From positions 1-64,000 of the IMG/VR virus record IMGVR_UViG_3300008259_005066: 64,000 nt of DNA. The stretch is one strand, 5' to 3'. The translations under genes were made by a program, and so were the position numbers. Shown here piece by piece: positions 1 through 62,191 of this stretch (positions within the stretch are counted from its first letter, which is position 1; each line of letters opens with the position of its first letter). A model generated the notes under the pieces. That model saw nothing but the letters and a program-made list of their open reading frames with translations, was not told the DNA's origin and did not search any database.

Positions 1-603
1 TTCTGTGACACGGATATCAGTCCTATGATACTCGTCTGCCTTTCCTGATGGATCCACGTGCCAGGCATAGAACTTAGACCATGGATAATCTTGTTTGAGG
101 CTAAGAAAAGCATTTAAATTGGGCACAGAATCATCATACATGATGATCTTGTCGTAGTGTTCTTTGCCCAAGAGATGTTGTAGTATGATCTTTTTCTTTT
201 CTTCTGTGGCGGCTTTGATGTTCAAGTTACCAGCACGATACACATGCACTTTTGACATGTCAATGCCATACTGGCGGAATGTGTCCAGGAAAACTTCTCG
301 GTCATTGAAGTCCGAGCGGGCAGTAAGCATGATCACTTTGTTGCCCGTGGCGATGTCTTGTTTGAGTTGGCGGATCATGCCGGGTATGGGCCGGGCCTGT
401 GTGTAGAATTCGCGGGCATCACGGAAAGCACCAAAGTCAAACTCTTCACCGGGCTGTAAGTGATAGTGCGTGAAATCGTGACTGTTGAGTTGCTTCACGA
501 TCCGGCCATCTCGCACCACATTGACCTTGGTGTCTGTGTTGACCAGGGTATCGTCGATGTCAAAGATGACTAGTTTGGAATTAGCGAATTCTTGTGCTCT
601 CAT
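1..603 (-). CDS. HAD-superfamily phosphatase (3'-partial, runs off the window; missing from the ORF track)
   Basis: Manual translation from ATG at 603 is open to base 1: MRAQEFANSKLVIFDIDDTLV...MLTARS...IIMYDDS, i.e. HAD motif I (DxDxT), motif II (T) and motif IV (DD). ATGA overlap with the upstream gene. Confidence 0.85.
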   Translation of the reverse strand, partial: MRAQEFANSKLVIFDIDDTLVNTDTKVNVVRDGRIVKQLNSHDFTHYHLQPGEEFDFGAFRDAREFYTQARPIPGMIRQLKQDIATGNKVIMLTARSDFNDREVFLDTFRQYGIDMSKVHVYRAGNLNIKAATEEKKKIILQHLLGKEHYDKIIMYDDSVPNLNAFLSLKQDYPWSKFYAWHVDPSGKADEYHRTDIRVTE

Positions 604-998
604 ATCATCATCTCTGGTAATGTTTCCAAGTTGGCTTTAATCTTGGCAAAGTTCATCATATATCGGTTGACAAAGTTGGCATAGCCGGCAGGATCTCGGG
701 CTTCCCAATCTGCCAATCTTTCTTTCATTGCTGTGTATTCTTCATTAAATGCCACAGCATTGTCGCTTTTACTTTTCCAAAGCCGTTTGACTGTTTCTTC
801 TAGTTCTCGGGTGTTGGGGTTGTTGGGATAGTGTTTTTTACATATCACCCACAACATGGCAGCCGAGTTGATAATCTTGGTGATGTTCCGATCGGATTGA
901 GCCTGTGCCGATCCCAATGCCGCAGAGCCAGCCACGGCACCTGCACCACGCAAGAAGTCTCTGCGAGTGATTTCGACTAATAATTCTTGTGCTCTCAT
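600..998 (-). CDS. Hypothetical protein with twin-arginine (Tat) signal peptide
   Basis: MRAQELLVE-ITRRDFLRGAGAVAGSAALGSAQA matches S/T-R-R-x-F-L, then a hydrophobic stretch and an AxA site. Confidence 0.75.
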   Translation of the reverse strand: MRAQELLVEITRRDFLRGAGAVAGSAALGSAQAQSDRNITKIINSAAMLWVICKKHYPNNPNTRELEETVKRLWKSKSDNAVAFNEEYTAMKERLADWEARDPAGYANFVNRYMMNFAKIKANLETLPEMMI

Positions 999-1579
999 AG
1001 GCTGTAGGGGTCCATTATCACTAGATGTCCATCACTGCGGCGGCGAAGGTTCTCTATCTGGCTGAGATCCAATGGTGCCTGGCCGCCCAAGGCTTGTTCT
1101 AATTTCAGCGTAGTATTTACTAAACCCACGATGTCATCACGATCCAGTTCTTTAGGAGCAGGATTGTTCTTCATGAACTCCTGCACACGATCACGTCCGC
1201 GTGCCACTGCTGACATGAGATTTTCTAGATAGTCCAGCGTGGCTTCTTCGTTGGCCACATAGTCTAGATATTCCATCTCATACACAAAATATGTTTCTCC
1301 ATCTACTTCAAAATCACCCACGTTGTAAATCCTGGGAATATAAGGATCGTTCTGATTGTTGACGAAAAATTTCACGTAGTTTTTTACTATCTGTTCGCGC
1401 TCATCTTCACCTATGCCCAAGACTTTGAGTATGGTGTTTCTGGGACTCAACAAGGCTATCTGATCGCGTCCTTCGCCGGCCAACTGATAGCCGCGATCAA
1501 AAAAATAGTTTTGTATGCGGTCGCTCACTGATAACTCATCGGGAAAGTTTACTTCTGAGATAAATTCCTGAGATCGCAT
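995..1579 (-). CDS. Protein-kinase-like (PKL/APH fold) protein
   Basis: Gly loop GEGRDQIA, ILKV lysine, YEMEYL hinge, DLSQIEN catalytic-loop-like and VIMDP metal-binding-like motifs. The D-to-N spacing is one residue longer than canonical. Confidence 0.6.
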   Translation of the reverse strand: MRSQEFISEVNFPDELSVSDRIQNYFFDRGYQLAGEGRDQIALLSPRNTILKVLGIGEDEREQIVKNYVKFFVNNQNDPYIPRIYNVGDFEVDGETYFVYEMEYLDYVANEEATLDYLENLMSAVARGRDRVQEFMKNNPAPKELDRDDIVGLVNTTLKLEQALGGQAPLDLSQIENLRRRSDGHLVIMDPYSL

Positions 1580-4500
1580 TATCTCAACTCTGGAACGACT
1601 TCTACAGGATCATCAAATCTAGTGCGTTGGACCCATTGTTGTGCCACACGATTGGCATCGCCTTGACTGTTGCCTATGCCACTGAATGTGTAAACCACTT
1701 CTCCGGTATTGGCATTACGAACTTGCCACTGTCCTGAGAATTCGCCCTGTGTTGATGTGGCAACAGGTTCTCGATTGCGCCGCCAGGCTGGTGGCTGTTG
1801 GGGGTGTGCAGATATCTGTATGACATCTCGACCTTGCATTTGCAACGCATCTAGCACATTCTGTCTGGCTGCTTCGGCACTGGCAGCATCAATGTTCAAA
1901 GAATCACTGGTTACTGTTCCATTCCTGCGCTCATCCCACATCACACGATAGTGTCCGGCGTCTGATACTGCGCCTGCGGGTTGAGGCTCACCTATGCGGG
2001 CCTGTATCTGTTCACGATCTCGCTCATTGTCTGCGGCCACTGCCGGTGTGACCTTGGGTTCTTTGAGGCGTTTGGCCACTTGAGCACGTGGACTCAGTTT
2101 CTTTTCTGGCTCAGGAGTGTCATCGGGCCTGCGATATATCTCCCAATCGTCGGAGAGTCGATCCCCATACTCTGCCTGGACCTTTTGTTTGGCGCTGTCA
2201 AAATCTCTGGCTCTCACAGTGAGTATGATGTCACCGTAGGAATCCTTGACATCATACCAGGGTTGTTTCTTACGGATGTCCAAATTGCGCCATTCGGGTG
2301 TGTTGCCATACTTGTCCTGGGCTTTCATATAGGCAGTGTCATATTCATCAGCATAGAAAGAGTCGATCACTCCATCCGGACCAGACTTGCGCTGATCATA
2401 CACTTCCCACTCTTCTTGACCAGTGGTGGGTATCTCTTTCTGGAGCACAGCATTGGCCCACTGTTTCTTGAGTTCTTCTGGAGTTATGGTGCCAGCGGCA
2501 AATTGAGAAAATAACTTGAGACCGTCATCCTGTGCACCAGGTGAGATCAGTTTATAGAGTTTCTTGGCATACTCTCGACGTTCCAGGCTGGGGCTGCCTG
2601 CGATCTGCATGGCCCGAGCAAAACGCAACATGGTATTGCGGATGTCATCATATTCACCGCGACTCTCCATGCTCAAATAATCACCACCAGGGCTACGGAA
2701 CTCGATGTAGCCGTCCTGGATGTGTGCGGAAGTATACTTGCTGTCTCCCACACCGTTCTGCACATAACGAGCAGCCAGTTCAATGAGATTTTTCTGCACC
2801 AGTTCTAGCGCACCCATGGGATCAAATCGGGCTTCAGTCAAGGTGCCACGGCGGCGTGCCACTCGCATGCTGTTGCGTAGTTTTTCCATGGCCGATGCCG
2901 CATAGGTGTTGGAAGCACGACCAAACTTGTCTAACACATATTCGTCGCCCATGAACAGCACCAATTTGACATAGTCTACGTCACCGCCCACATAGGGTAT
3001 AGAGATGCCCATGTGCAAGCCGGTGGACGAGTTGGTGTAGGCATCGGCTTCTGAGTTACCCCACTCAATGACCTGTTTTAATTTTTCCAGGGTTTCTGGC
3101 AAGGGCAAGGGCGGAGACACGATCTCCAGGCCCATTTCATCATCACGATCATCGGGATCTAGGCTGCCGTCGGGTTCGATGATCCATAGACCGGGCCGGC
3201 GTGTGGTTGAGTGATAGCCTGAACTCACTCTCACTGGCATGTCAATGGCACGCTGTAAACTGTCACCAATATCGCTCCACTCACGGCTGCCAGTGCCAGA
3301 GGAACCGCCGCTCCAGTAGGGCCAGTCAAGGCTTTCTTCGTTGGCGATGTCAGTCATGTAACCATAGCGGTCACGGAGGAAGTCGCGCTCGTCAAACTCG
3401 CCGCCTTCTCGCGTCATGTCCCAATAATATTCGCGAGCCGCATCGTAATATTCGCCTTGGCTTTCAAACTCATTGGTTATTTCTTCTTCGAATGCTTCGT
3501 AGGCCGCATCGGATGCTTGCTTGAATTTTTGGTATAATTCGTTGGATTGTGCATATTCATCTTGATCTGAACTCCGGGTGAATCTTGGTGCGCTGTCGCC
3601 GGCTTTCATTATAGCGGGCACTGCCTCGTCACCAAACATTTCCTCGACCTTGTCTTGGATACGGCTTTCGCGTTCTGAGTCATCGTCCCAGACGTTGGTC
3701 TCCATGTAGTCACGCACTTGATCTTCGGCATTCTCGTCCCAACTCTCGCTGATCTGTTCATCCACCCATTCCGTATAGGCTTCCCACAGGCTTTCTCGTA
3801 GATTCCTGGCGCCTTGGCGACTCAAACCATAGCCATAGTCATCATTGGAGAAGAAGTCTATGACATGGTCGATGTCATCGGGCCGCTCATCGTAGTCGTA
3901 GTCAGGTTCTTGATCGTAGTCTTCATCTTCGTCACGGCGGGTATCACGGAAGATCATTTCTGCTTCAAAGCCAGCACGTATACCTTCGGCTTCAGGTGAT
4001 CGTGCCCAGGCTTCCAAGGCCCCGGGCGACATCTTGACTTCCATGAGATCTTCGTCTTCTTTGACTTCGATATTGACGAATCTTGGATTGCCAGTGCTCG
4101 ATGGTGTTTTTTTCTTTGGTCGGTCTTGTGGTCTTTGTCGTTTCTGGGCCTGCCCTTGATATGGATCTATTTTTTGTCGTGGGTCTGGCACGGCAGGAGT
4201 CACGGGATTGACTGCTTCAAACACTCCAGTCTCTTTGTATTCCTTCAAGGCATTGGCCAAGTTCTTGATCAACAGTGCAGGACGTCCTTGGCTGTCGGTC
4301 TGCAATCCCAACTTGTTGGCTTCCTTGCCTACCTGTCCAGGTCGGATGTCCACTGTGAGTGCTGTTTTGAAACGTGGATCTCGGGCCTGCTTCTTGGTGG
4401 GGATGTATCCTGCGGCATCTTCGGCCACTTTACCTTGTATTTTCTGTTGTAGACGATAGGTCTTGATGAATTCTTGTTCCGAGCGTGTCAAAGGACGACC

Positions 4501-6678
4501 TGTCGTGGCCTTGCCCATGACAAACTTGTAGTAATCTTCGCGATCCTTTTGGCTGCGACTCACAGGCGTCTGTATGGATTCTCTGCGCGGTGCAGGACCT
4601 TCTATGGCCACCATGGCACGGAATGTGTTGCCCATCTGGTCGGCTTCATAATCCACAACTTTCCAACCGCCGGGGCCCAGTGTGATAGGACCATGCTGTT
4701 GTTGTGCGCGGTTGATGGCATTTTCCAGGGCCTGTCGATAGGCTTCTTCTGCTGATGCAGCCGCGGCGTTTGACGCAACACGCTCACCTTGCGGTCTAGG
4801 GCCACCATAGATCAACTTGCCACCCACACGTATTTCTCTGCTGCCACGTGCCATGTCTCGGGCTATGCCCTTGAGTTCTTCTTCAGCACCTGCACGGGTG
4901 AATATGCCCGAGGGTTGATATATCTGCTTGCCTATCTGATAGGCCGTGCGCCCCACATCCTGTGCCTGTGCTGGCTGTCCCAGTGCGGCAGCGGCTGCCA
5001 AGGCACCAGTGGCCAGTGTTTTTCCTAGACCCTCGTCTACATTGTAGGTAGGATCGGTCTTGACTTTTCGCATGCCAGCGGGTTGCCGGGGATCCTTGGG
5101 ATCGATGTCAGTGACATCTAGGCCCGTGGCTTCAAGATCTTTGATAAACTTATGTTCAGTTTCTTCATCGCCAAACGAGATTATGGAACTGGGCGGACCT
5201 GCACCAAAGTCATGCTTGCCCAAGCCTTTCATGTTGGAGATATGCTGTCCCAGTTTATACCAGTCATACACATCGCTCACATCTACCCTCACAGTGCCTG
5301 CGGGCATGGTAGGAGGGAATTCTGGTCCTGGTGGAGTCTGATCACCATAGTGTGCTTCGATGTCATCGTCTTCACCGGTAGCACCAGACTGTGCGGGTGA
5401 AAACTCCGTGAGTTGTTCTTCCACTGTTTCTGCGCCAAAGAATTCTGGATAACGATTTTGGAAATGGCGCATAATTATGCCGGCCTTGGCATTGGCTTCA
5501 TTTTCGTAGGGACTGCCAGTGCGACCCGCTGTGTCAGGCATGTCTCGGCCCAAGCGTTCATGCTGTTTGTAATGTGTGAGTTCATGTGCCACGGTGCGCA
5601 GGATGTCCATGATGTGGCGACCGTGCGTGGCCACCTCGATCATTTTCTTGTCATCTACATAATGGCCCATTGAATGGATGTGCTTGGTAAATTTTTCACC
5701 TTGCAAGATGATGCGAGGCAGTTGATCTAGTTTGAGATAGTGCGCGGCAAAATGCACGAAGCGTCGCACCACTTTGTCTATGGGTATGCTCTTGGCTTGG
5801 ACTTTGATCTCTGTGTCTTCGCGCACACTTTCTCCGCCCCCATCACCACCACCGTCTGCGGCTTCGGCGTCGCCGGTCTGACCATAATAACCATAGCCTG
5901 GATAATAGTATCCACCAAAAGAACCGTAACGGAATTTCTTTTTGGATTTTTTCTTTTTCTTTCGGCGCTCAGCCAGGCTCAGTTTTGAATCTTCTAGGCT
6001 GGCACGATGATCAAACAATCGCTTGACCAAGCCCTGTGTGCGCAGGATCTTGTAGGCCAGATTCTCAGGTCCGAACTCGCCATGTTCATCCAATCCGGCC
6101 TGCCGATATCGTTTTATCACGTCAGTGAGATTGGTGACTGTTTGGAGATCATCGCTGGTCAGTGCAAGCTCAATCAGGTCTCTGAGTTTTTCGTATTTTG
6201 CTTGGGTTGATTTTTCGTCGAGATTGCCTTGGCGTCGCACGGGAATACGAGTCCAGTCGTCACGCACGATGGAATACTCACCAAGGCTGCGAACAGGCTT
6301 GCCTGCGTCTTGCACATAGAGCTCGACGTCATAGCCTCTGATTTTTATATCGTGTTGATCGTTGTATTGATATTTCTTTGCGTTGAACAGCTCTTGATAT
6401 ACTTGGTCGGGATTGAGCTTGCTGAAATCTACTAAGAGATGCAGATCTATGTCGGAATGGGGAGTATAGGTGTATGCGGCATTGGATCCACTCACAGTGA
6501 TATCTTCCACTGCGAGATCACTGATGCCCAGGAATTCGCGGAAATCATCGGCGATTTTGATCAGGGCCTCACGCACTTCGGGACGCATGCGATCGCCGTC
6601 CCAGAGTGCAGGGTTTAATTCAGTGTGAAACTTTACCGCGTCCGACAGGCGGTAACTGTCTAATTCATTGATGTCCAT
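1579..6678 (-). CDS. 1699-aa multidomain protein: nucleotidyltransferase + zincin (HExxH) + putative amidoligase + C-terminal repeats
   Basis: GS-x10-DIDLH (pol-beta NTase) in residues 60-125; AHELTH at 364-369; GFEAE...W-x-I-x-PDGSL...EIVSPPL...NSSTGLHM...IEFR (COOH-NH2 ligase family). Confidence 0.8.
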   Translation of the reverse strand: MDINELDSYRLSDAVKFHTELNPALWDGDRMRPEVREALIKIADDFREFLGISDLAVEDITVSGSNAAYTYTPHSDIDLHLLVDFSKLNPDQVYQELFNAKKYQYNDQHDIKIRGYDVELYVQDAGKPVRSLGEYSIVRDDWTRIPVRRQGNLDEKSTQAKYEKLRDLIELALTSDDLQTVTNLTDVIKRYRQAGLDEHGEFGPENLAYKILRTQGLVKRLFDHRASLEDSKLSLAERRKKKKKSKKKFRYGSFGGYYYPGYGYYGQTGDAEAADGGGDGGGESVREDTEIKVQAKSIPIDKVVRRFVHFAAHYLKLDQLPRIILQGEKFTKHIHSMGHYVDDKKMIEVATHGRHIMDILRTVAHELTHYKQHERLGRDMPDTAGRTGSPYENEANAKAGIIMRHFQNRYPEFFGAETVEEQLTEFSPAQSGATGEDDDIEAHYGDQTPPGPEFPPTMPAGTVRVDVSDVYDWYKLGQHISNMKGLGKHDFGAGPPSSIISFGDEETEHKFIKDLEATGLDVTDIDPKDPRQPAGMRKVKTDPTYNVDEGLGKTLATGALAAAAALGQPAQAQDVGRTAYQIGKQIYQPSGIFTRAGAEEELKGIARDMARGSREIRVGGKLIYGGPRPQGERVASNAAAASAEEAYRQALENAINRAQQQHGPITLGPGGWKVVDYEADQMGNTFRAMVAIEGPAPRRESIQTPVSRSQKDREDYYKFVMGKATTGRPLTRSEQEFIKTYRLQQKIQGKVAEDAAGYIPTKKQARDPRFKTALTVDIRPGQVGKEANKLGLQTDSQGRPALLIKNLANALKEYKETGVFEAVNPVTPAVPDPRQKIDPYQGQAQKRQRPQDRPKKKTPSSTGNPRFVNIEVKEDEDLMEVKMSPGALEAWARSPEAEGIRAGFEAEMIFRDTRRDEDEDYDQEPDYDYDERPDDIDHVIDFFSNDDYGYGLSRQGARNLRESLWEAYTEWVDEQISESWDENAEDQVRDYMETNVWDDDSERESRIQDKVEEMFGDEAVPAIMKAGDSAPRFTRSSDQDEYAQSNELYQKFKQASDAAYEAFEEEITNEFESQGEYYDAAREYYWDMTREGGEFDERDFLRDRYGYMTDIANEESLDWPYWSGGSSGTGSREWSDIGDSLQRAIDMPVRVSSGYHSTTRRPGLWIIEPDGSLDPDDRDDEMGLEIVSPPLPLPETLEKLKQVIEWGNSEADAYTNSSTGLHMGISIPYVGGDVDYVKLVLFMGDEYVLDKFGRASNTYAASAMEKLRNSMRVARRRGTLTEARFDPMGALELVQKNLIELAARYVQNGVGDSKYTSAHIQDGYIEFRSPGGDYLSMESRGEYDDIRNTMLRFARAMQIAGSPSLERREYAKKLYKLISPGAQDDGLKLFSQFAAGTITPEELKKQWANAVLQKEIPTTGQEEWEVYDQRKSGPDGVIDSFYADEYDTAYMKAQDKYGNTPEWRNLDIRKKQPWYDVKDSYGDIILTVRARDFDSAKQKVQAEYGDRLSDDWEIYRRPDDTPEPEKKLSPRAQVAKRLKEPKVTPAVAADNERDREQIQARIGEPQPAGAVSDAGHYRVMWDERRNGTVTSDSLNIDAASAEAARQNVLDALQMQGRDVIQISAHPQQPPAWRRNREPVATSTQGEFSGQWQVRNANTGEVVYTFSGIGNSQGDANRVAQQWVQRTRFDDPVEVVPELR

Positions 6679-7685: not shown

Positions 7686-9206
7686 TTATTTCATTGGGTC
7701 AATGATGGTGTTCCAATTTGAACGGGTATGGATCAAGCGCATTCCGCTGTTGTCCATCCTCATGCGCCAGCCCAGCATTTGCAGATCTCTGCGCAGTGGA
7801 GCCAACATAGGACCAGGATCCTGTATCTTTTCGTCTTTGGCTATGTCTACTATTTTGAAGGCCAATTGTTTGGCTTGCTCATAGCCCTCGGGCGGAGTGG
7901 CCGAGGGCGGAAACGGAACCACATCACCTTCTTCGATATAGTCGGGAGATTCTTCCACAGGCATCCTCATCCGGATTTTTTCTGCGAGATTGAGTTGGCT
8001 CATGTCAACTTCTCGGCCACGTGCTATGGGTCTGCGACCTTGTTTCTGCATGAAACGCTCGTATTCTGCCAAGGCGTCAACCAAGCTCTTGACCACGCCA
8101 CCTTTGTAAAGTGCATATTGCAGTCCAGAGTAGTTTTTGCCTTTGACCATGTTGACCATGTCGGCAAACTTACGGGCGAGATTGTTGACCATGCTGGCCT
8201 CGTCCCAGGTGCCCATGCCACCGTCAGGTATGATCTGATGGCCAGCGTCTGGATCATTTACCAGCACTGCTTCAGTGGTTGGTGCAGGGTGGGTCTTGAT
8301 CCATTGTGCTATCTGAGATTTCACGTTTGGTGGAATCAGACTAGAATCAAGAGTGAATACATTGTCCGAATCCATTTTGCGACTAACATCAGTCACACGA
8401 TCATTGAGTTTAAGAGTCACAGCCTCTTGCGGTGGCACCCAGCGAATTTTGGAATTAGTGACCAGAGGGTTGCCTGGCTGACCAAATCTATCAGTCACAC
8501 GATATCCTATGTCAATAAACTGATCATTGCCCATTTTGATATAGTCTGTGCGTTTATTGAAAAGATCTAGTTCATTGAGTTGTTCCTCATTGACGTCTTT
8601 CCCGACGCCCATCACTGTGTCTAGTATTTCCACGATCTTGGCTATCTTTGCTTGATTGTCGGCTGCCAAGGGATACAGCACACCAGCCAGAGCGGCTTTT
8701 TGTTTGGGATCCATGCCGGGCCATTTGGCACGGATTTCAGTGGCTGACGTCATGCCCGGACCAAACTGCACAGTGGGCAGATAAGTCATGTAAGCATGAT
8801 CTTTCATGGGTTCGAGACCGTTGCGACGGTAGGGCTGTAAATAAGGGCTCAGTCCTTTACGAGGACCACGTGTGATTATCTGTCCAGGCTGGCCTGGCTG
8901 AGGATTCTGATCGCGATCTTTGTCTGAACGAACAAAAATCAACTGTGTTTCGTTGGGATCAAAATGTTGGGTTATTTCTTCTGCGCTGAAAGGTGATTTT
9001 ACCTGGATGAATCTGTTGCTGGGGATGCCGGCTTGCTGTGCCAGGAACTTCTTGGTCTTGAATGGAAATGGACGACCAGTGGTATCGTCTGTGGCCGCCA
9101 CATACACTTCGGCCGAAGGAAACGCTTCACGTGCGGCATCATACAAGGCTTTGTGCCCGGCATGATAAGGGTGGAATCCACCTGGTATGATCACTAATTT
9201 TTTCAT
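7686..9206 (-). CDS. Cytidyltransferase-like (HIGH-motif) protein with C-terminal extra modules
   Basis: GGFHPYHAGH (HxGH) and a distal SATEIR (KMSKS-like) motif within residues 1-200. Confidence 0.75.
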   Translation of the reverse strand: MKKLVIIPGGFHPYHAGHKALYDAAREAFPSAEVYVAATDDTTGRPFPFKTKKFLAQQAGIPSNRFIQVKSPFSAEEITQHFDPNETQLIFVRSDKDRDQNPQPGQPGQIITRGPRKGLSPYLQPYRRNGLEPMKDHAYMTYLPTVQFGPGMTSATEIRAKWPGMDPKQKAALAGVLYPLAADNQAKIAKIVEILDTVMGVGKDVNEEQLNELDLFNKRTDYIKMGNDQFIDIGYRVTDRFGQPGNPLVTNSKIRWVPPQEAVTLKLNDRVTDVSRKMDSDNVFTLDSSLIPPNVKSQIAQWIKTHPAPTTEAVLVNDPDAGHQIIPDGGMGTWDEASMVNNLARKFADMVNMVKGKNYSGLQYALYKGGVVKSLVDALAEYERFMQKQGRRPIARGREVDMSQLNLAEKIRMRMPVEESPDYIEEGDVVPFPPSATPPEGYEQAKQLAFKIVDIAKDEKIQDPGPMLAPLRRDLQMLGWRMRMDNSGMRLIHTRSNWNTIIDPMK

Positions 9207-9211
9207 ACCAG

Positions 9212-9219
9212 TATTTATA
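9212..9219 (-). promoter_or_regulatory. T4-type late promoter
   Basis: TATAAATA, 5 nt upstream of the ATG at 9206. Confidence 0.65.
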
Positions 9220-10199: not shown

Positions 10200-10895
10200 T
10201 TATTTATCGCGTATGAGTTTGACTGTTTTCCTTGTGATACGAGGTAACAACAGGCTCAGCATAGTAACTATGCCCATGCCATCATGATCAATGAAAAAGT
10301 TTTCACTGACATAATAGTGTTTTTGATCCTGTTCAATAAACTGCGCCAGACCCGGTCCCAATCGTATGCTTTCTTGCTTGATCAAGAAGTCCACTAGATT
10401 GTGGCGTTGAGGTTCATCCAGACGCTGTGCCCGGAAATAGGACCGGAACTCGTGCTGGCTGTTCTGGATCCTCAGCGTGTCTCTGGGGCGATCCAACACA
10501 CTGCGTTTCACGCTCACTGCATGCACATAAGGCAACTGTTCTATGGTGCGGATCAGGCCCAGATCGCTGGTGTAAACATATCCCCAATCACCTGACACTG
10601 TGATTTTGTAATTCTGTTGTGCCTGCAGGAAATCCAACATGGCATGGCAATTGGCTCGCTGTTCTTCGGTGATCTGACCCCGGCGGCTGGCCCAAGATCC
10701 ACCAAAGTTCGGACTGCGTTGCCGCCAGTCATTGCGATGGTTGATCATGCGATCGATGCGGTCATGCTCCATCTCTCGCACACAACTCATCTCGTCCATG
10801 CGGAAAGCCAAACAATACTCATAGAGATCGAAATAAGATCTATCTCTACGATGTATTTTAATGGTCAAAGGGCTAGTCGACTTGTATGATACCAT
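10200..10895 (-). CDS. Hypothetical protein
   Basis: Start moved to MVSYKS to limit overlap with clpA; start is uncertain. Confidence 0.6.
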   Translation of the reverse strand: MVSYKSTSPLTIKIHRRDRSYFDLYEYCLAFRMDEMSCVREMEHDRIDRMINHRNDWRQRSPNFGGSWASRRGQITEEQRANCHAMLDFLQAQQNYKITVSGDWGYVYTSDLGLIRTIEQLPYVHAVSVKRSVLDRPRDTLRIQNSQHEFRSYFRAQRLDEPQRHNLVDFLIKQESIRLGPGLAQFIEQDQKHYYVSENFFIDHDGMGIVTMLSLLLPRITRKTVKLIRDK

Positions 10896-13082
10896 CGGCG
10901 TCCACGGTTCCTGTGCTGGGTATTGGGTTGAGATCGCTGAAAGCCACTGTGCCATCGCGATAGTCTGCTGTGATTTCGCAGTCCTGCAAGCGATCAAACA
11001 GGATCTTGCGGCTCAATGGCACGCGGATCAGTTCGTCGATTTTGCGACCCAACGGCCTCGCACCCATCTTGGGATCATAGCCAACGTCTGCTAGATGCTC
11101 CACCATGGCTTCTGTCAGCGTGAGTCTGATGTTGCGATCCACTAGACTGCGTTTGAGTTCGTCTACGAACTTGATGACCACTTTCTTGATACTCAGCGGA
11201 TCCAGTTTGTTGAATTTGCAGATGAGATCCAAGCGATTGCGCAGTTCCGGGCGGAAGTAATCTTTCACAGCGCGATCTTCTTCGCCGGTCTTCTCGAGGC
11301 TCTGGCCAAACCCGATTGTGTTATTTTCATTGTCTCGAGCACCTAGATTTGACGTCATGATGATGATGCAGTTCTTGACGTCCACGGTCTTGCCATTGCT
11401 TCCAGTGATGGTGCCTTCGTCCATCATCTGCAGGAAGATGTTGGCTATGTCTGGGTGGGCTTTTTCCACTTCATCGAACAACAGCACTGAGAATGGATGT
11501 TTAGAAAGATCATTGATCAGTTTGCCCCCGGCCAGTTGGCTGTCATCATAGCCCACATAGCCCGGAGGTGCTCCCAGCAGTGAACTCACGGTGTGTCGAT
11601 CTTGATATTCGCTCATGTCGTATCTCAACAGTTTCATGTCGAGATTGTCGGCCAACAGCCGTGCCAGTTCTGTTTTACCTGTGCCAGTGGGGCCCAGGAA
11701 AAGGAAACTGCCCACTGGCCTGCGACCTGATGCGATACCAGCGAAGTTCACATAGATACGTTCCAACACTTGATCCACCACATGATCCTGACCGTAAAGT
11801 TTTTGCTTGATGTTGCTGTCTAGTTCGGTCACTCGGGTGTTTACATCATTCTTCACACGTTCGGGTGGAATATTGGCCACACGGCCCACTTGATCCTGGA
11901 TCAAATCTGCGGTGATCACCACATCATCAAGATCTTTGATGCGTTCTCGGGCACAGGCCGCATCTACTAGATCTATGCTCTTGTCAGGATTTTTGCGATC
12001 AGTGATATAACGACTGGCCAGTTCCACTGCTTTGGTGATGGCATCTGCGTTGATTTTGACCCGATGGAATTCTTCCATGCGAGGTTGCAATCCTGTCAGT
12101 ATGCGTATAATGCGCGATCTTTTTCAAACGACTCATAGTATTCTTCCCAAGTGGTTGATGCTATGACTTTGAGCAAGCCCTTGGTTATGGCCGGCTTGAT
12201 CATGTTGGCAAAGTCTAGACTGGATCCAGACCCTGCACCAGCACCGCGCATGGTGTGCGCTTCATCTATGAACAGTATGACATTTTTCTTATGTTCCAAG
12301 GCCATGAGCACGGCCTTGAGTTTTTCTTCGAACTCGCCGCGATATTTGCTTCCTGCCAGCAATGAGCCAATCTCCAGGCTCCAGACTTCATGATCCTTTA
12401 GGAATTCTGGCACTGTGCCGTTGTATATCAGCGTGGCCAGGCCCTCGGCGATGGCAGTCTTGCCCACTCCGGGATCTCCTACCATGAGCACGTTTGACTT
12501 AAACTTTTTGGCCAATACCGTGATGATTTCATTGAGTTCTGTGGATCGCCCGATCAAGGGCTCCAGTTTATCCTCTCTCGCCCGCTGGCTGAAATTGATA
12601 CAGTGTTCGGTGAGGATTTCGTTGGCCTGATCATCACTGATCACTCCGTCCTTGGTAGTGTAGTTGGCTTGCCAAAATTCGATGAACTCTTTCTTTTCCA
12701 GCCCGTGCTTGAGGAAATAATAGTGTGCATGGCTGTTTGACTCGTTCATGATGGCCAACCATAGATCTATAGTGGTCACTTGCCTGCGGCCTGTGAACAA
12801 CACCTGGGTGAGCGCACGATTGAACACACGTTCCAATCCATTGGTTTTCTTGGGATCTTCGTCGCGATTCATACGCAGGCTGACCATGCTGTCGATATAA
12901 CTTTCAAGGTCTTGATCGAGATGATCCACAGGCGTGCCAAACTTGACGATGACCTGCGTGAAAGGCTGATGCCTTACCAAGGCCAAGGCCAGGTGTTCCA
13001 GCGTGACATATTCGTGTCGCTTTACGCGGGCCAGTTTTTGCGCCTGGGCTAATATTTGTTCAATTTCAGGATTCTGTTGCAT
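10873..13082 (-). pseudogene. clpA: ClpA-like AAA+ chaperone split by a frameshifting deletion near 12105
   Basis: Clp N-domain, D1 Walker A GDPGVGKT and Walker B LFIDEAH, D2 GPTGTGKT, LLFDEVEKAH and GARPL. KDRAL joins IRILTGL in another frame; the RRF-containing segment is absent. Confidence 0.9.
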
Positions 13083-13512
13083 TCTGTTCCTTGGCTCGAT
13101 CATGCATGGTTATTCCTTGTAGATGATCCAACTCGTGTTGGAAACATCTGGCTTCAAGTCCCGAAAGATCTGCTTCGACCCAATCACCGAAATGATTTTG
13201 GTATCTCGCCCTGATCGCATCGGGTCTTTTAAGTATACATGAGTCTCCGGGAAAACTCAAGCATCCTTCCTCAAATTCGGCAAACACATCACTGCTAGAC
13301 ACTATGACAGGATTAAAGCACGCCCGATCGTGTCCGTCAACGCTCATCACAAACAATCGTTTGGAAAGGCCAATCTGTGGAGCTGCCAATCCTATGCCAT
13401 TTTGCAAGCGCATCAACCCAAACATCTGGGTGGCCAGATCATGATTGCGGACAGGATACTGGAAATCTACAGGCTTGGCTTGATTGTGTAAAACCCTGCG
13501 TGTCAACTTCAT
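13066..13512 (-). CDS. def: Peptide deformylase
   Basis: GIGLAAPQIG, EGCLS and QHELDHL motifs; ATG follows TAAATA. Confidence 0.95.
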   Translation of the reverse strand: MKLTRRVLHNQAKPVDFQYPVRNHDLATQMFGLMRLQNGIGLAAPQIGLSKRLFVMSVDGHDRACFNPVIVSSSDVFAEFEEGCLSFPGDSCILKRPDAIRARYQNHFGDWVEADLSGLEARCFQHELDHLQGITMHDRAKEQNATES

Positions 13513-16169: not shown

Positions 16170-17279
16170 TTATTTTGTGGGCTCAAATAGCCAAGTATGG
16201 TCTTGTTTTCTCAAGACGTCTAGTTCTAGGTTCACACGTTGGGCAGTGGTCCATGCATCGGAGTCAAATTCATGCTGGATGATGTTGTTGCGCAGATCTA
16301 CCAGGACATCACGTGCAGAATCTACAAAATCCAGAGCCAACAAACAATCAAGATAGTCAATGGCCGCAGGACGCATATGATCTGGCCAGTTAATGGGAGA
16401 GAAGTATCTAGGATGGTTGCATATCTGTATGAACTGTGTGCGTCCGTTGGGACGATCGTTGAATTTCCGGACGATGTTGATAAATGCCAGCAAGGGTCCA
16501 AGTTGGAAAAAATTTAGTTGCGTTATCACTGTGCTGAAGTTCACACTGTGACCATGGTTGGCTAGATACAGGACGTTGCGCTCGATCTGCGACCAACTGG
16601 TGCCGTGGCGTATGATTTCTGCAGCTGGGCCCACAGCATCAAGACTCACAGTGAAATTAACATTGGGCATGGTGCTGGCGATTTCCAACCACCATGGATC
16701 ACGGAAGCTGCCATTGGTGATCATGATGATCTTGGTATCTAACTGCTCACGTCGTATACGATTGACTATTTCTTTTACTTCGGGCAATAAGGTAGGTTCA
16801 CCGCCGGTGAACATCAGTCTATCAATGGTCGATATGTTGTCCAAGATCCATTGTTTGTCTGACACTGTGGCGGTTTTTTCTGGCGGAATCTGATAGAGAG
16901 TTTGTAAGAATTCGCTCTGGCGCACATCTTGTGCGATACCGTTGGAAAAATAAGGTTCGCATGACCGGCATCGAAAGTTGCAGACGTTGCTGGAACGATA
17001 ATCCACATAATCTATATCAGTGTCTGACACAGGAGTGGAACCATAGTGTTGCAACGCTCCCAGTCTGGTGCCCACACCATGCTGTTGTTCGTTACGGATA
17101 CAGTCAGCACATCCAGAGTCTATGGATCCTGACAGGATGTTTTGTTGCAAATTCCTCAATCGATCACTGGACAACCACTGAGTCACAGTGATCGGAGCAG
17201 TCTCTGTGAAACTGCAACAAGGCTTGATACCTCGTGGCTCAATGAAAACATGTCGGAATGGCAAAGGACAATAACTCAT
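16170..17279 (-). CDS. Radical SAM protein with N-terminal SPASM/twitch-like Cys cluster
   Basis: CNFRCRSC (CxxxCxxC), FTGGEPT; N-terminal CP...PCC...C..C. Confidence 0.9.
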   Translation of the reverse strand: MSYCPLPFRHVFIEPRGIKPCCSFTETAPITVTQWLSSDRLRNLQQNILSGSIDSGCADCIRNEQQHGVGTRLGALQHYGSTPVSDTDIDYVDYRSSNVCNFRCRSCEPYFSNGIAQDVRQSEFLQTLYQIPPEKTATVSDKQWILDNISTIDRLMFTGGEPTLLPEVKEIVNRIRREQLDTKIIMITNGSFRDPWWLEIASTMPNVNFTVSLDAVGPAAEIIRHGTSWSQIERNVLYLANHGHSVNFSTVITQLNFFQLGPLLAFINIVRKFNDRPNGRTQFIQICNHPRYFSPINWPDHMRPAAIDYLDCLLALDFVDSARDVLVDLRNNIIQHEFDSDAWTTAQRVNLELDVLRKQDHTWLFEPTK

Positions 17280-17893
17280 AGTGCAGACACTCTGTGTAAC
17301 CAATGATCAGCGGCTGCCACATGCGCTGCCTCCAGTGGATGCCAACCTGGGCTCTCGGCAAAGCCACGACCTCGGCTCCATTCGAGGAATGTCTGTCCAT
17401 CAAAATCCTGGAGATGTTGGTGTATTTTGCTTTGTAAAACCTGCACATAATCCGGAGCATGCCATTGTTGATCCAACAGCAATCGATCCATGTAAGTCAT
17501 CACACATCGATGACCTTGCATCATGTCGCACGCATGTGATACATAGATCAAATTCCGGAACTTGTCTGACAGTTCACCGTGGAAATGTCTATAGTAAAGA
17601 TCGTCATTTGGTGAATCATCCAATGCGGGCCGTATGGTATGCCACTGGGCGTCTTGGCTGTGGACATAATCAAAACGATCAATCCAGGTCCAGTTGACGA
17701 GATAGGTGGCCCGGGGCCCAAAACGATCCAGCGCCTCAATCACTTGTTGTAGTATGCGGAGATTGCCCACGCCAGGTTGGGCTAGACAATGATACTCTGA
17801 GTCCAGTCTCTGCGCGACCAGCGCGGGCCATGTGCTGTTTGCATCTTGTAGATCGCTACCGTAGAAAAAACTGTCGCCACAACTCACTATCAT
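17276..17893 (-). CDS. SGNH/GDSL-like hydrolase
   Basis: CGDSF block I, PGVGN and a C-terminal HP; paralog of 34680..35375. Confidence 0.65.
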   Translation of the reverse strand: MIVSCGDSFFYGSDLQDANSTWPALVAQRLDSEYHCLAQPGVGNLRILQQVIEALDRFGPRATYLVNWTWIDRFDYVHSQDAQWHTIRPALDDSPNDDLYYRHFHGELSDKFRNLIYVSHACDMMQGHRCVMTYMDRLLLDQQWHAPDYVQVLQSKIHQHLQDFDGQTFLEWSRGRGFAESPGWHPLEAAHVAAADHWLHRVSAL

Positions 17894-37503: not shown

Positions 37504-37532
37504 ATTATAATACCTTTTGGATTATTGGTCAA
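37504..37532 (-). promoter_or_regulatory. Sigma70-type promoter
   Basis: TTGACC-17-TATAAT. Confidence 0.75.
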
Positions 37533-38928
37533 CCTGCTGAAAAATAGGCTCTAACCAAGGAAAAACTCGTTGCCAATTGGTTGCTCTACGCCGATCGAGT
37601 TCGGTTAAAAATTCTCGGAGCTTTATGATTTCCTCTGTGTCAAATCCTTTGCTGGCGCTTTCTTGAGCAATGCCTTGCAGATATTTTTTGATATTGATCT
37701 GCTCCGCATCATTCTCGGGCATGATCTGGATAGCTCTATTAAAATCATCCACGAAAACATCGCCTAAAATATCAACATGCATGTGCAACGGTGATTCTGC
37801 ACTGTTCATGTAATGAGATACATGGCGTATCTTTCTCCATTGATTGATGCGCTCAATAAGATCAGGCAGAGTCTTGATAGTGAGAGGAGTCAGTGTGCTA
37901 CCTACTATTAATCTAATCCAAGATTGATCAAGCAGGTATCGGAAATTTTTTTCCCAAATGTCTAGTTTGAGAGGAAAACGTGCATATTCTTGTTCAGGTC
38001 CCCAGCAATCGAGACTGGCAGTTACCACAAAAGTTTTGAGATGTTGTTTGTCAATGAGATTTTTAATTTTGCTTACCACCGCAGACACTCGAGCCGGAGT
38101 AGCATTGAGATTGGTAAAAATCTGGAACTCTAGTTCCGGCATTGGGTTGTGATCAAAAAAATCCAGACAATCATCGAGATCTTTTTGGAACAAAGGCTCG
38201 CCGCCAAGGAAATTAAAGTTGGTAAGGCTATGTCCGTGTTGCGATATCCACTCAAACATCTTGGTTTTATTTTTTGCGATATCAGGACTTTTCTTAAATG
38301 TATTCGAGATGATCAAACCATTTTTTTCAAACTTACCATGTTTTTTGTTTTCAGCATCCCATAAACTGCTGAAATGCGGACCGCAATACACACATTTCAA
38401 ATTACAGACATTGTCAAAGTAAACTTCTAATATACGAGGAGTGACTTGGATAGCAACAAGATCATCATCCAGTTCTGGCGGAGCAAACATTCCAGGCATA
38501 TCAAGATTGGTTATCCTGTCACTTTGTCCTCCGGCCGTTTCTATATCTCGACAATAACCACAACCTTTTTCGGGCCAAAATCCCTGGAGCATGCGAGATC
38601 TATCGTCCAACTTGCTAGGAGTGTTGTGAAAATCAAATACATCGATATCAAACTTGTGATGATTGGTGCGATGACAACTGGCAGTATTTTCTGTCGTAAG
38701 ATAAACTGTGCTCCAGTTCCATTTGAGTTGACAAGCTGTGGCAGTTTTTATGGGAAATGTTTTGTGTTGATATCGAGGCTGATTTCTGTAACTACCTATC
38801 ACATAACCATGAACTTGTTGACACTCATCCTGTATCCACTGTGGTAGAGATAAAAAATCTTGTTCATGGTCGCAGTCCGGCCATGATGAATCTTTTATGC
38901 TTAGATAAAATTCCTGCCAAGGCGTCAT
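37522..38928 (-). CDS. Radical SAM protein
   Basis: CNLKCVYC and FLGGEP; AT-rich. Confidence 0.9.
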   Translation of the reverse strand: MTPWQEFYLSIKDSSWPDCDHEQDFLSLPQWIQDECQQVHGYVIGSYRNQPRYQHKTFPIKTATACQLKWNWSTVYLTTENTASCHRTNHHKFDIDVFDFHNTPSKLDDRSRMLQGFWPEKGCGYCRDIETAGGQSDRITNLDMPGMFAPPELDDDLVAIQVTPRILEVYFDNVCNLKCVYCGPHFSSLWDAENKKHGKFEKNGLIISNTFKKSPDIAKNKTKMFEWISQHGHSLTNFNFLGGEPLFQKDLDDCLDFFDHNPMPELEFQIFTNLNATPARVSAVVSKIKNLIDKQHLKTFVVTASLDCWGPEQEYARFPLKLDIWEKNFRYLLDQSWIRLIVGSTLTPLTIKTLPDLIERINQWRKIRHVSHYMNSAESPLHMHVDILGDVFVDDFNRAIQIMPENDAEQINIKKYLQGIAQESASKGFDTEEIIKLREFLTELDRRRATNWQRVFPWLEPIFQQVDQ

Positions 38929-61724: not shown

Positions 61725-62191
61725 TAATCGTAGATCCAACCCAGATCCTCGATCCGGTGTATCCAAGTAAACACTGGGATGTCGAAATCCAGTGTCCAGA
61801 TTCCATTCCATCCCAGGTAAGTGTGAGCAGATAGATATTCTGGTAGATCCTGTCCAGACTTCCGTTGTTCAGTGGCCCAGGGTTCTGGGTATCGAGGACG
61901 ATAACGTCCTTGCCATAGTAATTTGTCAGTGCTGATATCGTTTAATCTCACACCCTTTATTACCACGGCTTTGTCTTTGTTCCCCACTGTGTCTGAATCT
62001 TGTTTGTTGAGCAATTCAACTGAAACTTTGGCATCACCTTTGCCGGATTCCCATGTATGGGAAAAATGGGTGGCTTTTTCGAGAGGGCCGGCCCAGCGCC
62101 ATTCTGGGCCTATCTTCACGATTATCTCAGGCAGTTCCTCATGCCACACAGAATCGATTTCGATATCGATCTTAGTTCTGTAGGTAGCCAT
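61724..62191 (-). CDS. Hypothetical protein accompanying a radical SAM gene
   Basis: Start MATYRT overlaps the radical SAM end. Confidence 0.65.
   Translation of the reverse strand: MATYRTKIDIEIDSVWHEELPEIIVKIGPEWRWAGPLEKATHFSHTWESGKGDAKVSVELLNKQDSDTVGNKDKAVVIKGVRLNDISTDKLLWQGRYRPRYPEPWATEQRKSGQDLPEYLSAHTYLGWNGIWTLDFDIPVFTWIHRIEDLGWIYD

What the first reader, a model, noticed from the sequence alone, without database searches (positions are those of the whole stretch)
600..998. Tat signal directly behind a predicted maturation site: a 'package, cleave, inject, export' route
Seen: LLVE is followed at once by ITRRDFLRGAGAVAGSAALGSAQA, a canonical twin-arginine peptide with an AxA peptidase site. 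Established: Tat exports folded proteins carrying S/T-R-R-x-F-L-K. Inference: prohead cleavage would expose a short Tat signal, so the injected protein could reach the periplasm right after infection (for example for superinfection exclusion or envelope modification). Alternative: it is an ordinary Tat substrate with a long n-region.
Basis: partly seen in the sequence, partly recalled or inferred. Interest (0 to 1): 0.8.

Follow-up and report, generated by a model that had tools for sequence, protein, structure and literature searches.

The report
Capsid-targeting leader fused to Tat signal
A small gene of an uncultured freshwater giant phage joins a T4-style "load into the capsid and trim" leader directly to a bacterial Tat export signal, so a protein carried in the virion could plausibly be re-exported to the periplasm of the next host; this route has not been described and is untested.

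Summary
The ORF 600-998 (minus strand, 132 aa) reads a 9-residue leader ending L-V-E, then a canonical Tat signal (T-R-R-D-F-L-R, weak h-region, A-Q-A site), then a 99-aa orphan helical domain. Both curated Tat models score above threshold.

The leader is not private to this gene. Four clustered genes here share it, and at least 132 genes on at least 120 IMG/VR contigs carry it on unrelated cargos. The consensus is MRAxEF[ILV]xE, close to the T4 internal-protein capsid-targeting sequence MKTYQEFIAE.

Modules that follow the leader in one phage sit inside long ORFs in others. At 95 such internal junctions, 65 have hydrophobic-x-Glu just before the module, against 1.4% expected. That is the specificity of the T4 gp21 prohead protease.

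The Tat cassette follows [LI]-x-E in every homolog, including forms where it lies 135-670 residues into a polyprotein.

The closest cultured relative, Pseudomonas phage PA5oct, has a T4-order head module with a gp21 homolog. I did not find the protease on this contig.

Packaging, injection and Tat export remain inferred. Verdict: real, new variant of a known kind, interpretation partly supported.

The parts
972..998 (-). Leader, residues 1-9 (MRAQELLVE). It is a capsid-targeting-sequence-like propeptide ending in an L-x-E site.
   Evidence: Searches give the sequence and coordinates. T4 ipII and ipIII start MKTYQEFIAE. The leader family consensus is MRAxEF[ILV]xE.
900..971 (-). Tat signal peptide, residues 10-33, with the twin arginines at 960-965 and a predicted signal-peptidase site A-Q-A|Q at its end.
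   Evidence: Pfam 28.8 bits against 22.7. TIGR01409 26 bits against 16.7. Invariant in homologs.
603..899 (-). Mature domain of 99 aa, a predicted all-helical bundle of unknown function (stop codon at 600-602).
   Evidence: AlphaFold2 mean pLDDT 92.3 and pTM 0.83. No Foldseek match with E<0.6 in PDB or BFVD. Only 6 relatives among 1.84 billion representative proteins.
995..1579 (-). Upstream leader-tagged gene of 194 aa, starting MRSQEFISE. Its stop overlaps the Tat gene's start (ATGA).
   Evidence: Weak PHROG match to a T7 gp0.7-like protein kinase family, E=1e-4.
1..603 (-). Downstream leader-tagged gene starting MRAQEFANS, cut by the window edge. It is 614 aa in L007 and holds a HAD phosphatase-like part, a GNAT-like part and a C-terminal basic module.
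   Evidence: Internal module starts in L007.
1579..6678 (-). Polyvalent-type protein of 1699 aa that heads the translationally coupled cluster. It has a nucleotidyltransferase-like N-terminus, an HExxH motif (5557-5592) and an amidoligase domain. It also has an internal junction S-L-A-E|RRKKKK (5950-5988) whose downstream module is a separate leader-tagged gene in other contigs.

Best explanation
The gene encodes a three-part pre-pro-protein of an uncultured freshwater jumbo myovirus related to Pseudomonas phage PA5oct. Part 1 (residues 1-9) is a member of a leader family, MRAxEF[ILV]xE, that I read as the counterpart of the T4 internal-protein capsid-targeting sequence. Its front half would bind the scaffolding core, and its end (hydrophobic-x-Glu) would be the cleavage site of a gp21-family prohead protease. 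Part 2 (residues 10-33) is a complete Tat signal. Part 3 is a 99-aa helical domain. Proposed route: made late; loaded into the prohead through the leader; trimmed after Glu9, which leaves I-T-R-R-D-F-L at the new N-terminus; ejected with the DNA into the next cell's cytoplasm; refolded; recognised by host TatBC; exported; released by signal peptidase after A-Q-A. The protein would then act in the periplasm before any phage gene is expressed. Shown: the sequence anatomy, the leader family, the junction rule, and co-conservation of the site and the RR motif. Inferred: every physical step (packaging, cleavage, ejection, export) and the function of the mature domain.
For: (1) Both curated Tat models score above cut-off.
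(2) Four clustered, translationally coupled genes share the leader.
(3) The pattern for MRAQEF-h-x-E gives at least 132 genes on at least 120 IMG/VR contigs, against fewer than 1 expected. Nearly all are at ORF starts, and about 215 distinct cargos were collected.
(4) In loci not chosen by the leader, 83 of 108 ORFs starting M-[RK]-x-x-[ED]-[FLIY] have a hydrophobic residue at 7 and Glu at 9, against 45 of 4733 other ORFs.
(5) T4 ipII and ipIII start MKTYQEFIAE. gp21 cuts after L/I-x-E, and CTS residues 4 and 7 target while 8 and 10 direct processing (PMC9026906).
(6) The same cargo (KWSxKYKxSINC) carries MK[ST]FKQFQE in T4-like cyanophages.
(7) At 95 independent internal junctions, P1 is Glu in 72, P3 is L/I/V/M/F in 68, and both hold in 65. 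The expectation is 1.4%, and shifted controls give 0-10.
(8) The Tat cassette follows [LI]-x-E in all 15 sequences. It is internal in P0006, P0007, L011, L012 and a second L137 protein with other passengers.
(9) In P0008, DNA-enzyme-like modules follow the Tat passenger, so export of the unprocessed protein makes little sense.
(10) Leader contigs carry T4-like terminase and sheath genes. PA5oct has the portal, gp67-slot, protease and capsid genes in T4 order, and its protease is 37% identical to gp21. The gp67-slot proteins start MKINDIITE (a PA5oct virion protein by MS annotation) or MRARDFLTE.
(11) Natural bacterial Tat signals often start M-T-R-R-D-F-L-K, so a two-residue n-region is normal.
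Against: No proteomic or genetic data exist for this phage. No gp21-type protease was located on the window's own 315-kb contig: the window holds no head genes, and the HIITEMW motif scan did not hit that contig.

The untrimmed precursor already looks like a working Tat signal, so Tat could export it from the producing cell in competition with packaging.

T4 gp21 sites mostly have small P1' residues. Here P1' is Ile, and it varies widely across the family.

Internal, uncleaved Tat signals do exist (class IV and V substrates, PMC13673990), so the fused forms do not strictly require proteolysis.

Proteins ejected through a tail must unfold and refold. Tat needs a folded passenger, and refolding is not known for this domain.

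The timing of expression is unknown; no significant late-promoter signal was found.
Confidence: 0.4

Rival explanations
1. It is an ordinary phage-encoded Tat substrate. The protein is made during infection and exported at once from the producing cell, and the nine leading residues simply serve as the n-region. The shared leader reflects a common translation-initiation or coupling cassette (ATGA stop/start overlaps) or some other N-terminal tag unrelated to capsids.
For: The full precursor has net positive charge before the h-region and passes both Tat models. Gene starts overlap the preceding stops (ATGA), which partly constrains codon 2. No head genes lie in the window.
Against: This does not explain why the same nine residues head about 215 unrelated, mostly non-secreted cargos. 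It does not explain why hydrophobic-x-E persists at internal junctions that lack the Met-Arg-Ala start. It does not explain why the leader resembles the experimentally defined T4 CTS. Synonymous variation in leader codons points to selection on the peptide.
Confidence: 0.28
2. Processing is real but happens in the cytoplasm. A phage peptidase (the HExxH module of the neighbouring polyvalent protein, or the phage Clp system) cuts leader-tagged proteins and polyproteins at hydrophobic-x-E in the producing cell. The freed Tat module is then exported there, without any passage through the virion.
For: A polyvalent protein with an HExxH motif heads the cluster. Iyer et al. propose autoproteolysis by such peptidases before or after packaging (PMC5512222). 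The window encodes ClpP and a split ClpA-like ATPase.
Against: The site specificity matches gp21-family proteases, and head proteins of related contigs carry the same N-terminal L-x-E. Zincin specificity for P1 Glu is not established. Leader-like N-termini occur on the gp67-slot prohead protein beside the protease.
Confidence: 0.15
3. The Tat signal acts as an uncleaved or internal membrane-insertion signal (class III or V type). It would tether the protein, or the fused polyproteins, to the inner membrane with the helical domain in the periplasm.
For: Internal uncleaved Tat signals with a folded N-terminal cytoplasmic domain are known, for example FecR (PMC13673990). The cassette is internal in several homologs.
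Against: The h-region is short and weakly hydrophobic (0.87) and is followed by a conserved small-x-small site with Ala at -1 in nearly all homologs. The window protein has only nine residues ahead of the signal.
Confidence: 0.1

Closest known systems
T4 internal proteins IPI, IPII, IPIII (and Alt) with the capsid-targeting sequence, processed by prohead protease gp21
   Same: They have a leader of about 10 residues of the same pattern (M, basic, x, (x), Q/K, E, F, I/L, x, E) shared by otherwise unrelated small proteins. The leader ends in L/I-x-E. The genes sit in plastic clusters. The cargo is thought to act at the start of the next infection.
   Different: The leader here is one residue shorter and Arg-Ala based. 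P1' is not restricted to small residues. The family is far larger and is interchangeable with internal polyprotein junctions. No T4 internal protein carries an export signal. Packaging is unproven here.
Polyvalent proteins of phages and conjugative elements (Iyer, Burroughs, Anand, de Souza, Aravind 2017, PMC5512222)
   Same: They are large multi-domain proteins (NTase, zincin-like HExxH, amidoligase, ParB-like, HAD, GNAT modules) predicted to be packaged and delivered with the DNA, with proteolytic release of modules.
   Different: That paper does not use the words 'signal peptide' or 'periplasm' in its main text. It does not describe a common N-terminal leader, and processing is ascribed to embedded peptidases rather than a prohead protease.
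Ejection proteins of giant phages phiKZ and SPN3US, cut by gp21-related proteases
   Same: Many head-internal proteins are loaded through propeptides and cut after Glu at a short motif by a diverged gp21 homolog.
   Different: The motif there is S/A/G-x-E, no short universal N-terminal leader is known, and it is a different phage lineage.
Class I Tat substrates, and class V substrates such as FecR
   Same: They share the S/T-R-R-x-F-L-K motif, a weak h-region and an AxA site. Internal Tat signals are known to work in class IV and V substrates.
   Different: Known substrates are host proteins made in the cell that exports them. None is known to be unmasked by a viral protease or delivered by a virion.
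T4 Spackle and Imm (periplasmic or membrane superinfection-exclusion proteins)
   Same: They are phage proteins that act in the envelope early in infection. (From my own knowledge, not tested here.)
   Different: They are synthesised de novo and use Sec-type signals or membrane insertion. There is no sequence or fold similarity.

Membership tests
T4-type capsid-targeting-sequence (CTS) internal proteins | N-terminal leader of about 10 aa of the MKTYQEFIAE type | tested here: met
   MRAQELLVE compared with T4 ipII and ipIII from NC_000866. The family consensus is MRAxEF[ILV]xE.
T4-type capsid-targeting-sequence (CTS) internal proteins | Leader ends in the gp21 site L/I-x-E | tested here: met
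   L-V-E at residues 7-9. All 15 Tat-cassette sequences have [LI]-x-E before the signal. The site rule is taken from PMC9026906.
T4-type capsid-targeting-sequence (CTS) internal proteins | Same leader on several unrelated proteins of one phage | tested here: met
   Four genes in the cluster. Two or three per locus elsewhere.
T4-type capsid-targeting-sequence (CTS) internal proteins | Genome encodes a gp21-family prohead protease and scaffold core | tested here: inconclusive
   Present in the closest cultured relative PA5oct (37% identical to gp21) and in 173 related IMG/VR stretches. Not found in the window, and not found on its contig by the motif scan.
T4-type capsid-targeting-sequence (CTS) internal proteins | Protein present in virions with the leader removed, and ejected on infection | not testable with these tools
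   This needs virion mass spectrometry or N-terminal sequencing. The only indirect support is that PA5oct homologs of a leader-tagged cargo and of the gp67-slot protein are annotated as ESI-MS/MS virion proteins.
Tat (twin-arginine) signal peptide, class I substrate | S/T-R-R-x-F-L-K motif scored by curated profiles | tested here: met
   T-R-R-D-F-L-R. Pfam 28.8 bits against 22.7, and TIGR01409 26.0 bits against 16.7.
Tat (twin-arginine) signal peptide, class I substrate | Weakly hydrophobic h-region followed by a small-x-small peptidase site | tested here: met
   Mean hydropathy 0.87 and A-Q-A|Q. Ala at -1 is kept in homologs.
Tat (twin-arginine) signal peptide, class I substrate | Export depends on TatABC and on the RR pair; host has a Tat system | not testable with these tools
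   The host is unknown; the habitat is freshwater or lake.
Polyvalent proteins (Iyer et al. 2017) | Many effector-type domains in one polypeptide of a phage, with a peptidase module | tested here: met
   This applies to the neighbouring 1699-aa ORF (NTase-like, HExxH, amidoligase) and to fused homologs P0006-P0008, L011 and L012. The 132-aa Tat gene itself is a single module.

The most novel reading that the evidence does not exclude
A large, uncultured clade of freshwater jumbo myoviruses uses one universal leader (MRAxEF[ILV]xE) and hydrophobic-x-Glu junctions to load hundreds of interchangeable effector modules into the capsid, either as stand-alone genes or as polyproteins. A subset of these modules carries Tat signals that are unmasked only by the prohead protease. 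Virion-delivered proteins would then be re-exported by the host's own Tat machinery into the periplasm of the newly infected cell. That would be a virion-to-cytoplasm-to-periplasm delivery route with no known precedent.
Probability: 0.33. Interest if true: 0.85.

Novelty: new variant of a known kind. Interest (0 to 1): 0.66.

Why it matters
If true, phages can place ready-made proteins in the periplasm of a new host within moments of injection, using the host's Tat system. That would open a new compartment to injected effectors such as exclusion of competing phages, repair of the entry wound, or blocking of envelope-based defence.

It would also extend the T4 capsid-targeting idea to a huge environmental phage clade and give a simple sequence rule for predicting its injected proteome: the leader plus hydrophobic-x-E junctions. 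The short leader could be tried as a packaging tag, as the T4 CTS has been.

Even if the export step fails, the leader and junction grammar is a useful annotation rule for polyvalent proteins.

Tried and rejected
- **Near-identical DNA and tblastn in cultured phages:** no match for the region or for the Tat protein. The basic NFADG cargo module also has no match.
- **Function of the mature domain:** Foldseek against PDB and BFVD and the ESM Atlas gave nothing usable. The best TM-score, about 0.5, was to a type II secretion pilotin at E=3.5, which I do not accept.
- **T4 head proteins in the fetched loci:** phmmer found only terminase and sheath, no gp21 or gp23, near the leader genes.
- **Physical link between protease and leader genes:** megablast found no overlap between protease loci and leader or terminase loci. 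The protease motif scan did not hit the window's contig.
- **Timing of expression:** the T4 late-promoter motif TATAAATA occurs twice in the window against 0.9 expected, and sigma-70-like sites are at the chance level, so nothing can be said.
- **Laid reads:** RNA-library contigs cover only parts of the two upstream genes. This is not proof of transcription. No variants were seen in 600-998.
- **Literature:** 'MRAQEF' occurs in no paper, hits for 'MRAREF' are unrelated, and no paper combines twin-arginine with virion and ejected.
- **Internal translation starts as an explanation for internal Tat cassettes:** rejected, because P0007 has no Met within about 70 residues upstream.
- **Host-derived auxiliary gene:** rejected, because there are only six relatives, all in phage-like contexts.

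Full report
**What is there**

The finding's coordinates hold one ORF on the minus strand, 600-998, of 132 aa. It has three parts:
- residues 1-9, MRAQELLVE (window 972-998);
- residues 10-33, a twin-arginine signal with T-R-R-D-F-L-R, a Gly/Ala-rich h-region (mean hydropathy 0.87) and A-Q-A before Gln34 (900-971);
- residues 34-132, a domain that AlphaFold2 models with high confidence as a helical bundle (pLDDT 92.3).

Pfam TAT_signal (28.8 bits, cut-off 22.7) and NCBIfam TIGR01409 (26.0 bits, cut-off 16.7) both pass their curated thresholds.

**Genomic setting**

The gene is the third of a translationally coupled row on the minus strand:
- a 1699-aa ORF (1579-6678) with a nucleotidyltransferase-like N-terminus, an HExxH motif and an amidoligase domain;
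- a 194-aa gene (995-1579);
- the Tat gene;
- a gene cut by the window edge (1-603).

Stops and starts overlap. The last three genes start MRSQEFISE, MRAQELLVE and MRAQEFANS.

The identical IMG/VR contig (L007, 315,778 bp) shows that the cut gene is 614 aa (HAD-like, GNAT-like and a basic C-terminal module). It also shows a fourth leader gene 0.5 kb further on.

The rest of the window holds auxiliary genes and no head genes: ClpP, a split ClpA-like ATPase, DnaJ, peptide deformylase, superoxide dismutase, NAD synthase, PhoH, MazG, DNA methylases and several radical SAM enzymes. The sequence occurs in freshwater and lake metagenomes.

**The leader is a family, not an n-region**

These carry 132 genes, where fewer than one match is expected by chance (my estimate from the pattern's degeneracy). 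Nearly all matches sit at ORF starts and head very diverse proteins.

I then looked at loci chosen for other reasons (terminase and protease neighbourhoods, and the window). There, 108 distinct ORFs start M-[RK]-x-x-[ED]-[FLIY]. Of these, 83 have a hydrophobic residue at position 7 and Glu at position 9, against 45 of 4733 other ORFs. The consensus is MRAxEF[ILV]xE.

Codons vary synonymously between leaders, so the peptide is what is conserved.

T4 ipII and ipIII, read from the T4 record, start MKTYQEFIAE, and ipI starts MKTFKEF. According to the review PMC9026906:
- the first ten residues of IPIII are the capsid-targeting sequence;
- residues 4 and 7 matter for targeting, and residues 8 and 10 for processing;
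- gp21 cuts after L/I-x-E.

One cargo family that follows the leader here (KWSxKYKxSINC) occurs in T4-like cyanophages behind MK[ST]FKQFQE. This links the two leader types through a shared cargo.

**The junction rule**

Modules that follow the leader in one contig lie inside long ORFs in others. I aligned leader-stripped cargos to all ORFs in hand and kept internal hits that start at cargo residue 1. This gave 95 independent junctions:
- Glu at P1 in 72;
- L/I/V/M/F at P3 in 68;
- both in 65, against 1.4% expected from composition and 0-10 in shifted controls.

The window's own 1699-aa ORF shows this. Its S-L-A-E|RRKKKK junction precedes a module that starts separate genes as MRAQEFVVE|KKKRK elsewhere.

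So the front of the leader is needed only at a polypeptide's N-terminus, while hydrophobic-x-Glu is needed before every module. That is the same division of labour as described for the T4 CTS.

**The Tat cassette obeys the rule**

A profile of the mature domain found only six relatives among 1.84 billion representatives. Together with the word-index and IMG/VR searches, they show the cassette in four settings:
- **Behind the N-terminal leader:** the window protein, P0001-P0005, P0008, P0009 and L010.
- **Behind a ParB-like module:** as ..Q-I-T-E| in P0006 and ..H-I-A-E| in P0007.
- **Deep inside ORFs of about 1000 aa:** as ..F-L-L-E| in L011 and L012, with different passengers.
- **Inside a 482-aa protein of L137:** as ..E-L-D-E|, with yet another passenger.

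TIGR01409 passes its cut-off in the window protein and all eight relatives scanned, at internal positions 136, 211, 425 and 671 in the fused forms. The second L137 cassette was found by motif only.

In P0008 the Tat passenger is followed by ParB-like and basic modules after further x-x-E junctions. Exporting that protein unprocessed would send DNA-directed modules to the periplasm, which argues for cleavage before export.

After cleavage the signal would start I-T-R-R. Natural signals are just as short: of 119 genome matches to M-T-R-R-D-F-[LF]-K, 81 are followed by an uncharged h-region in an ORF of at least 80 aa.

**Which protease**

Contigs with leader genes carry T4 gp17-like terminase (phmmer about 1e-50) and gp18-like sheath genes. 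That terminase defines a clade of at least 598 IMG/VR stretches, many on contigs of 315-347 kb.

Its closest cultured relatives are Pseudomonas phage PA5oct and its kin (52% identity), then Phosso, Atu_ph07, GAP32 and CBB. The window's ClpA-like gene points to the same group. One window gene is 81% identical to a gene 2 kb from the terminase in L187.

PA5oct has its head genes in T4 order: portal, a small gp67-slot protein, a scaffold-like protein, the head maturation protease, another scaffold-like protein, and the major head protein. Its protease is 37% identical to T4 gp21 and keeps the GVSSRG motif.

Related IMG/VR head modules show N-terminal L-x-E on the capsid, scaffold and protease proteins. 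The gp67-slot protein starts MKINDIITE in PA5oct, where it is annotated as detected in virions, and MRARDFLTE in L230 and L241. A PA5oct virion protein, gp279, is a homolog of one leader-tagged cargo.

I did not find the protease on the window's own contig.

**What remains inferred, and the rivals**

Nothing here shows packaging, cleavage, ejection or export.
- **Ordinary Tat substrate.** The untrimmed precursor is itself a plausible Tat substrate, so export from the producing cell is a live rival.
- **Cytoplasmic processing.** The neighbouring HExxH peptidase or the phage Clp system could do the cutting in the cytoplasm (PMC5512222).
- **Uncleaved membrane signal.** Internal uncleaved Tat signals exist (class IV and V, PMC13673990), so the fused forms could be membrane proteins.
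- **P1' mismatch.** P1' is broader here than in T4.
- **Unknown function.** The mature domain has no recognisable relative, so its role is unknown.

I put the full package-trim-inject-export route at about 0.4. The narrower claim, that the leader and hydrophobic-x-E mark proteolytically processed, probably capsid-borne modules, I put at roughly 0.65.

**Novelty**

CTS-tagged internal proteins, gp21-type processing, polyvalent proteins and Tat signals are all known. I found no published description of this leader family, and none of an export signal placed directly behind a prohead-type cleavage site. I rate it a new variant of a known kind. It gives a clear and testable prediction.

Noticed in passing
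window 1579-6678 (minus), sub-feature 4957-5046: The 1699-aa polyvalent-type ORF has an internal signal-like stretch right after a V-D-E site: a Lys, an Ala-rich h-region and A-Q-A|Q, but no RR. Similar 'EGW..L.AAG.GAA' modules follow the leader or x-x-E junctions in L112, L029 and L179. This may be a second kind of export or membrane signal unmasked by cleavage.
   Followed up: partly
IMG/VR loci L014-L133, L138-L217: The leader family MRAxEF[ILV]xE heads hundreds of unrelated small proteins in an uncultured clade of (mostly freshwater) jumbo myoviruses. Two or three paralogous leader proteins of about 120-130 aa sit between the sheath and terminase genes.
   Followed up: yes
L137 8915-10363: A 482-aa protein carries a second, internal Tat cassette (..E-L-D-E|L-T-R-R-D-F-L-R-G-A-G-A..) with a different passenger of about 115 aa. 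It lies on the same contig as the fused homolog P0007.
   Followed up: partly
L005 10924-11145 and many leader loci (e.g. L021, L032, L040): A very common 64-73-aa leader-tagged family (leader, then N/T-A-S-x-G-A-T-S-S-G-S-V-A-T-V) looks superficially like the Tat cassette but has no RR pair. Its function is unknown.
   Followed up: no
window 10873-13103 and other window genes: The phage encodes a ClpA-like ATPase split into two ORFs, plus ClpP, DnaJ, peptide deformylase, Fe/Mn superoxide dismutase, NAD synthase, a Bax1-I family protein, an Hc1 histone-like protein, PhoH, MazG and two DNA methylases.
   Followed up: partly
window 16170-17303, 37522-38928, 62172-63494: The window holds at least three radical SAM genes. 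Radical SAM genes also flank the terminase in related contigs (L204), so this looks like a hallmark of the clade.
   Followed up: no
Synechococcus phages Bellamy gp122 (L134 1501-1656) and SynMITS9220M01_096 (L135 1501-1620): Tiny T4-like cyanophage proteins start MK[ST]FKQFQE and continue with the same Cys-rich basic module that follows the leader in the freshwater clade. They are candidate internal proteins of cyanophages.
   Followed up: partly
window 1277-1519 and 2270-2461: Contigs from two metatranscriptome libraries cover parts of the two genes upstream of the Tat gene. DNA carry-over cannot be excluded.
   Followed up: no
window 9212-9219 (minus): A T4 late-promoter-like TATAAATA lies in the 16-nt gap before gene 7686-9206. 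There are only two copies in the window, which is not significant.
   Followed up: yes
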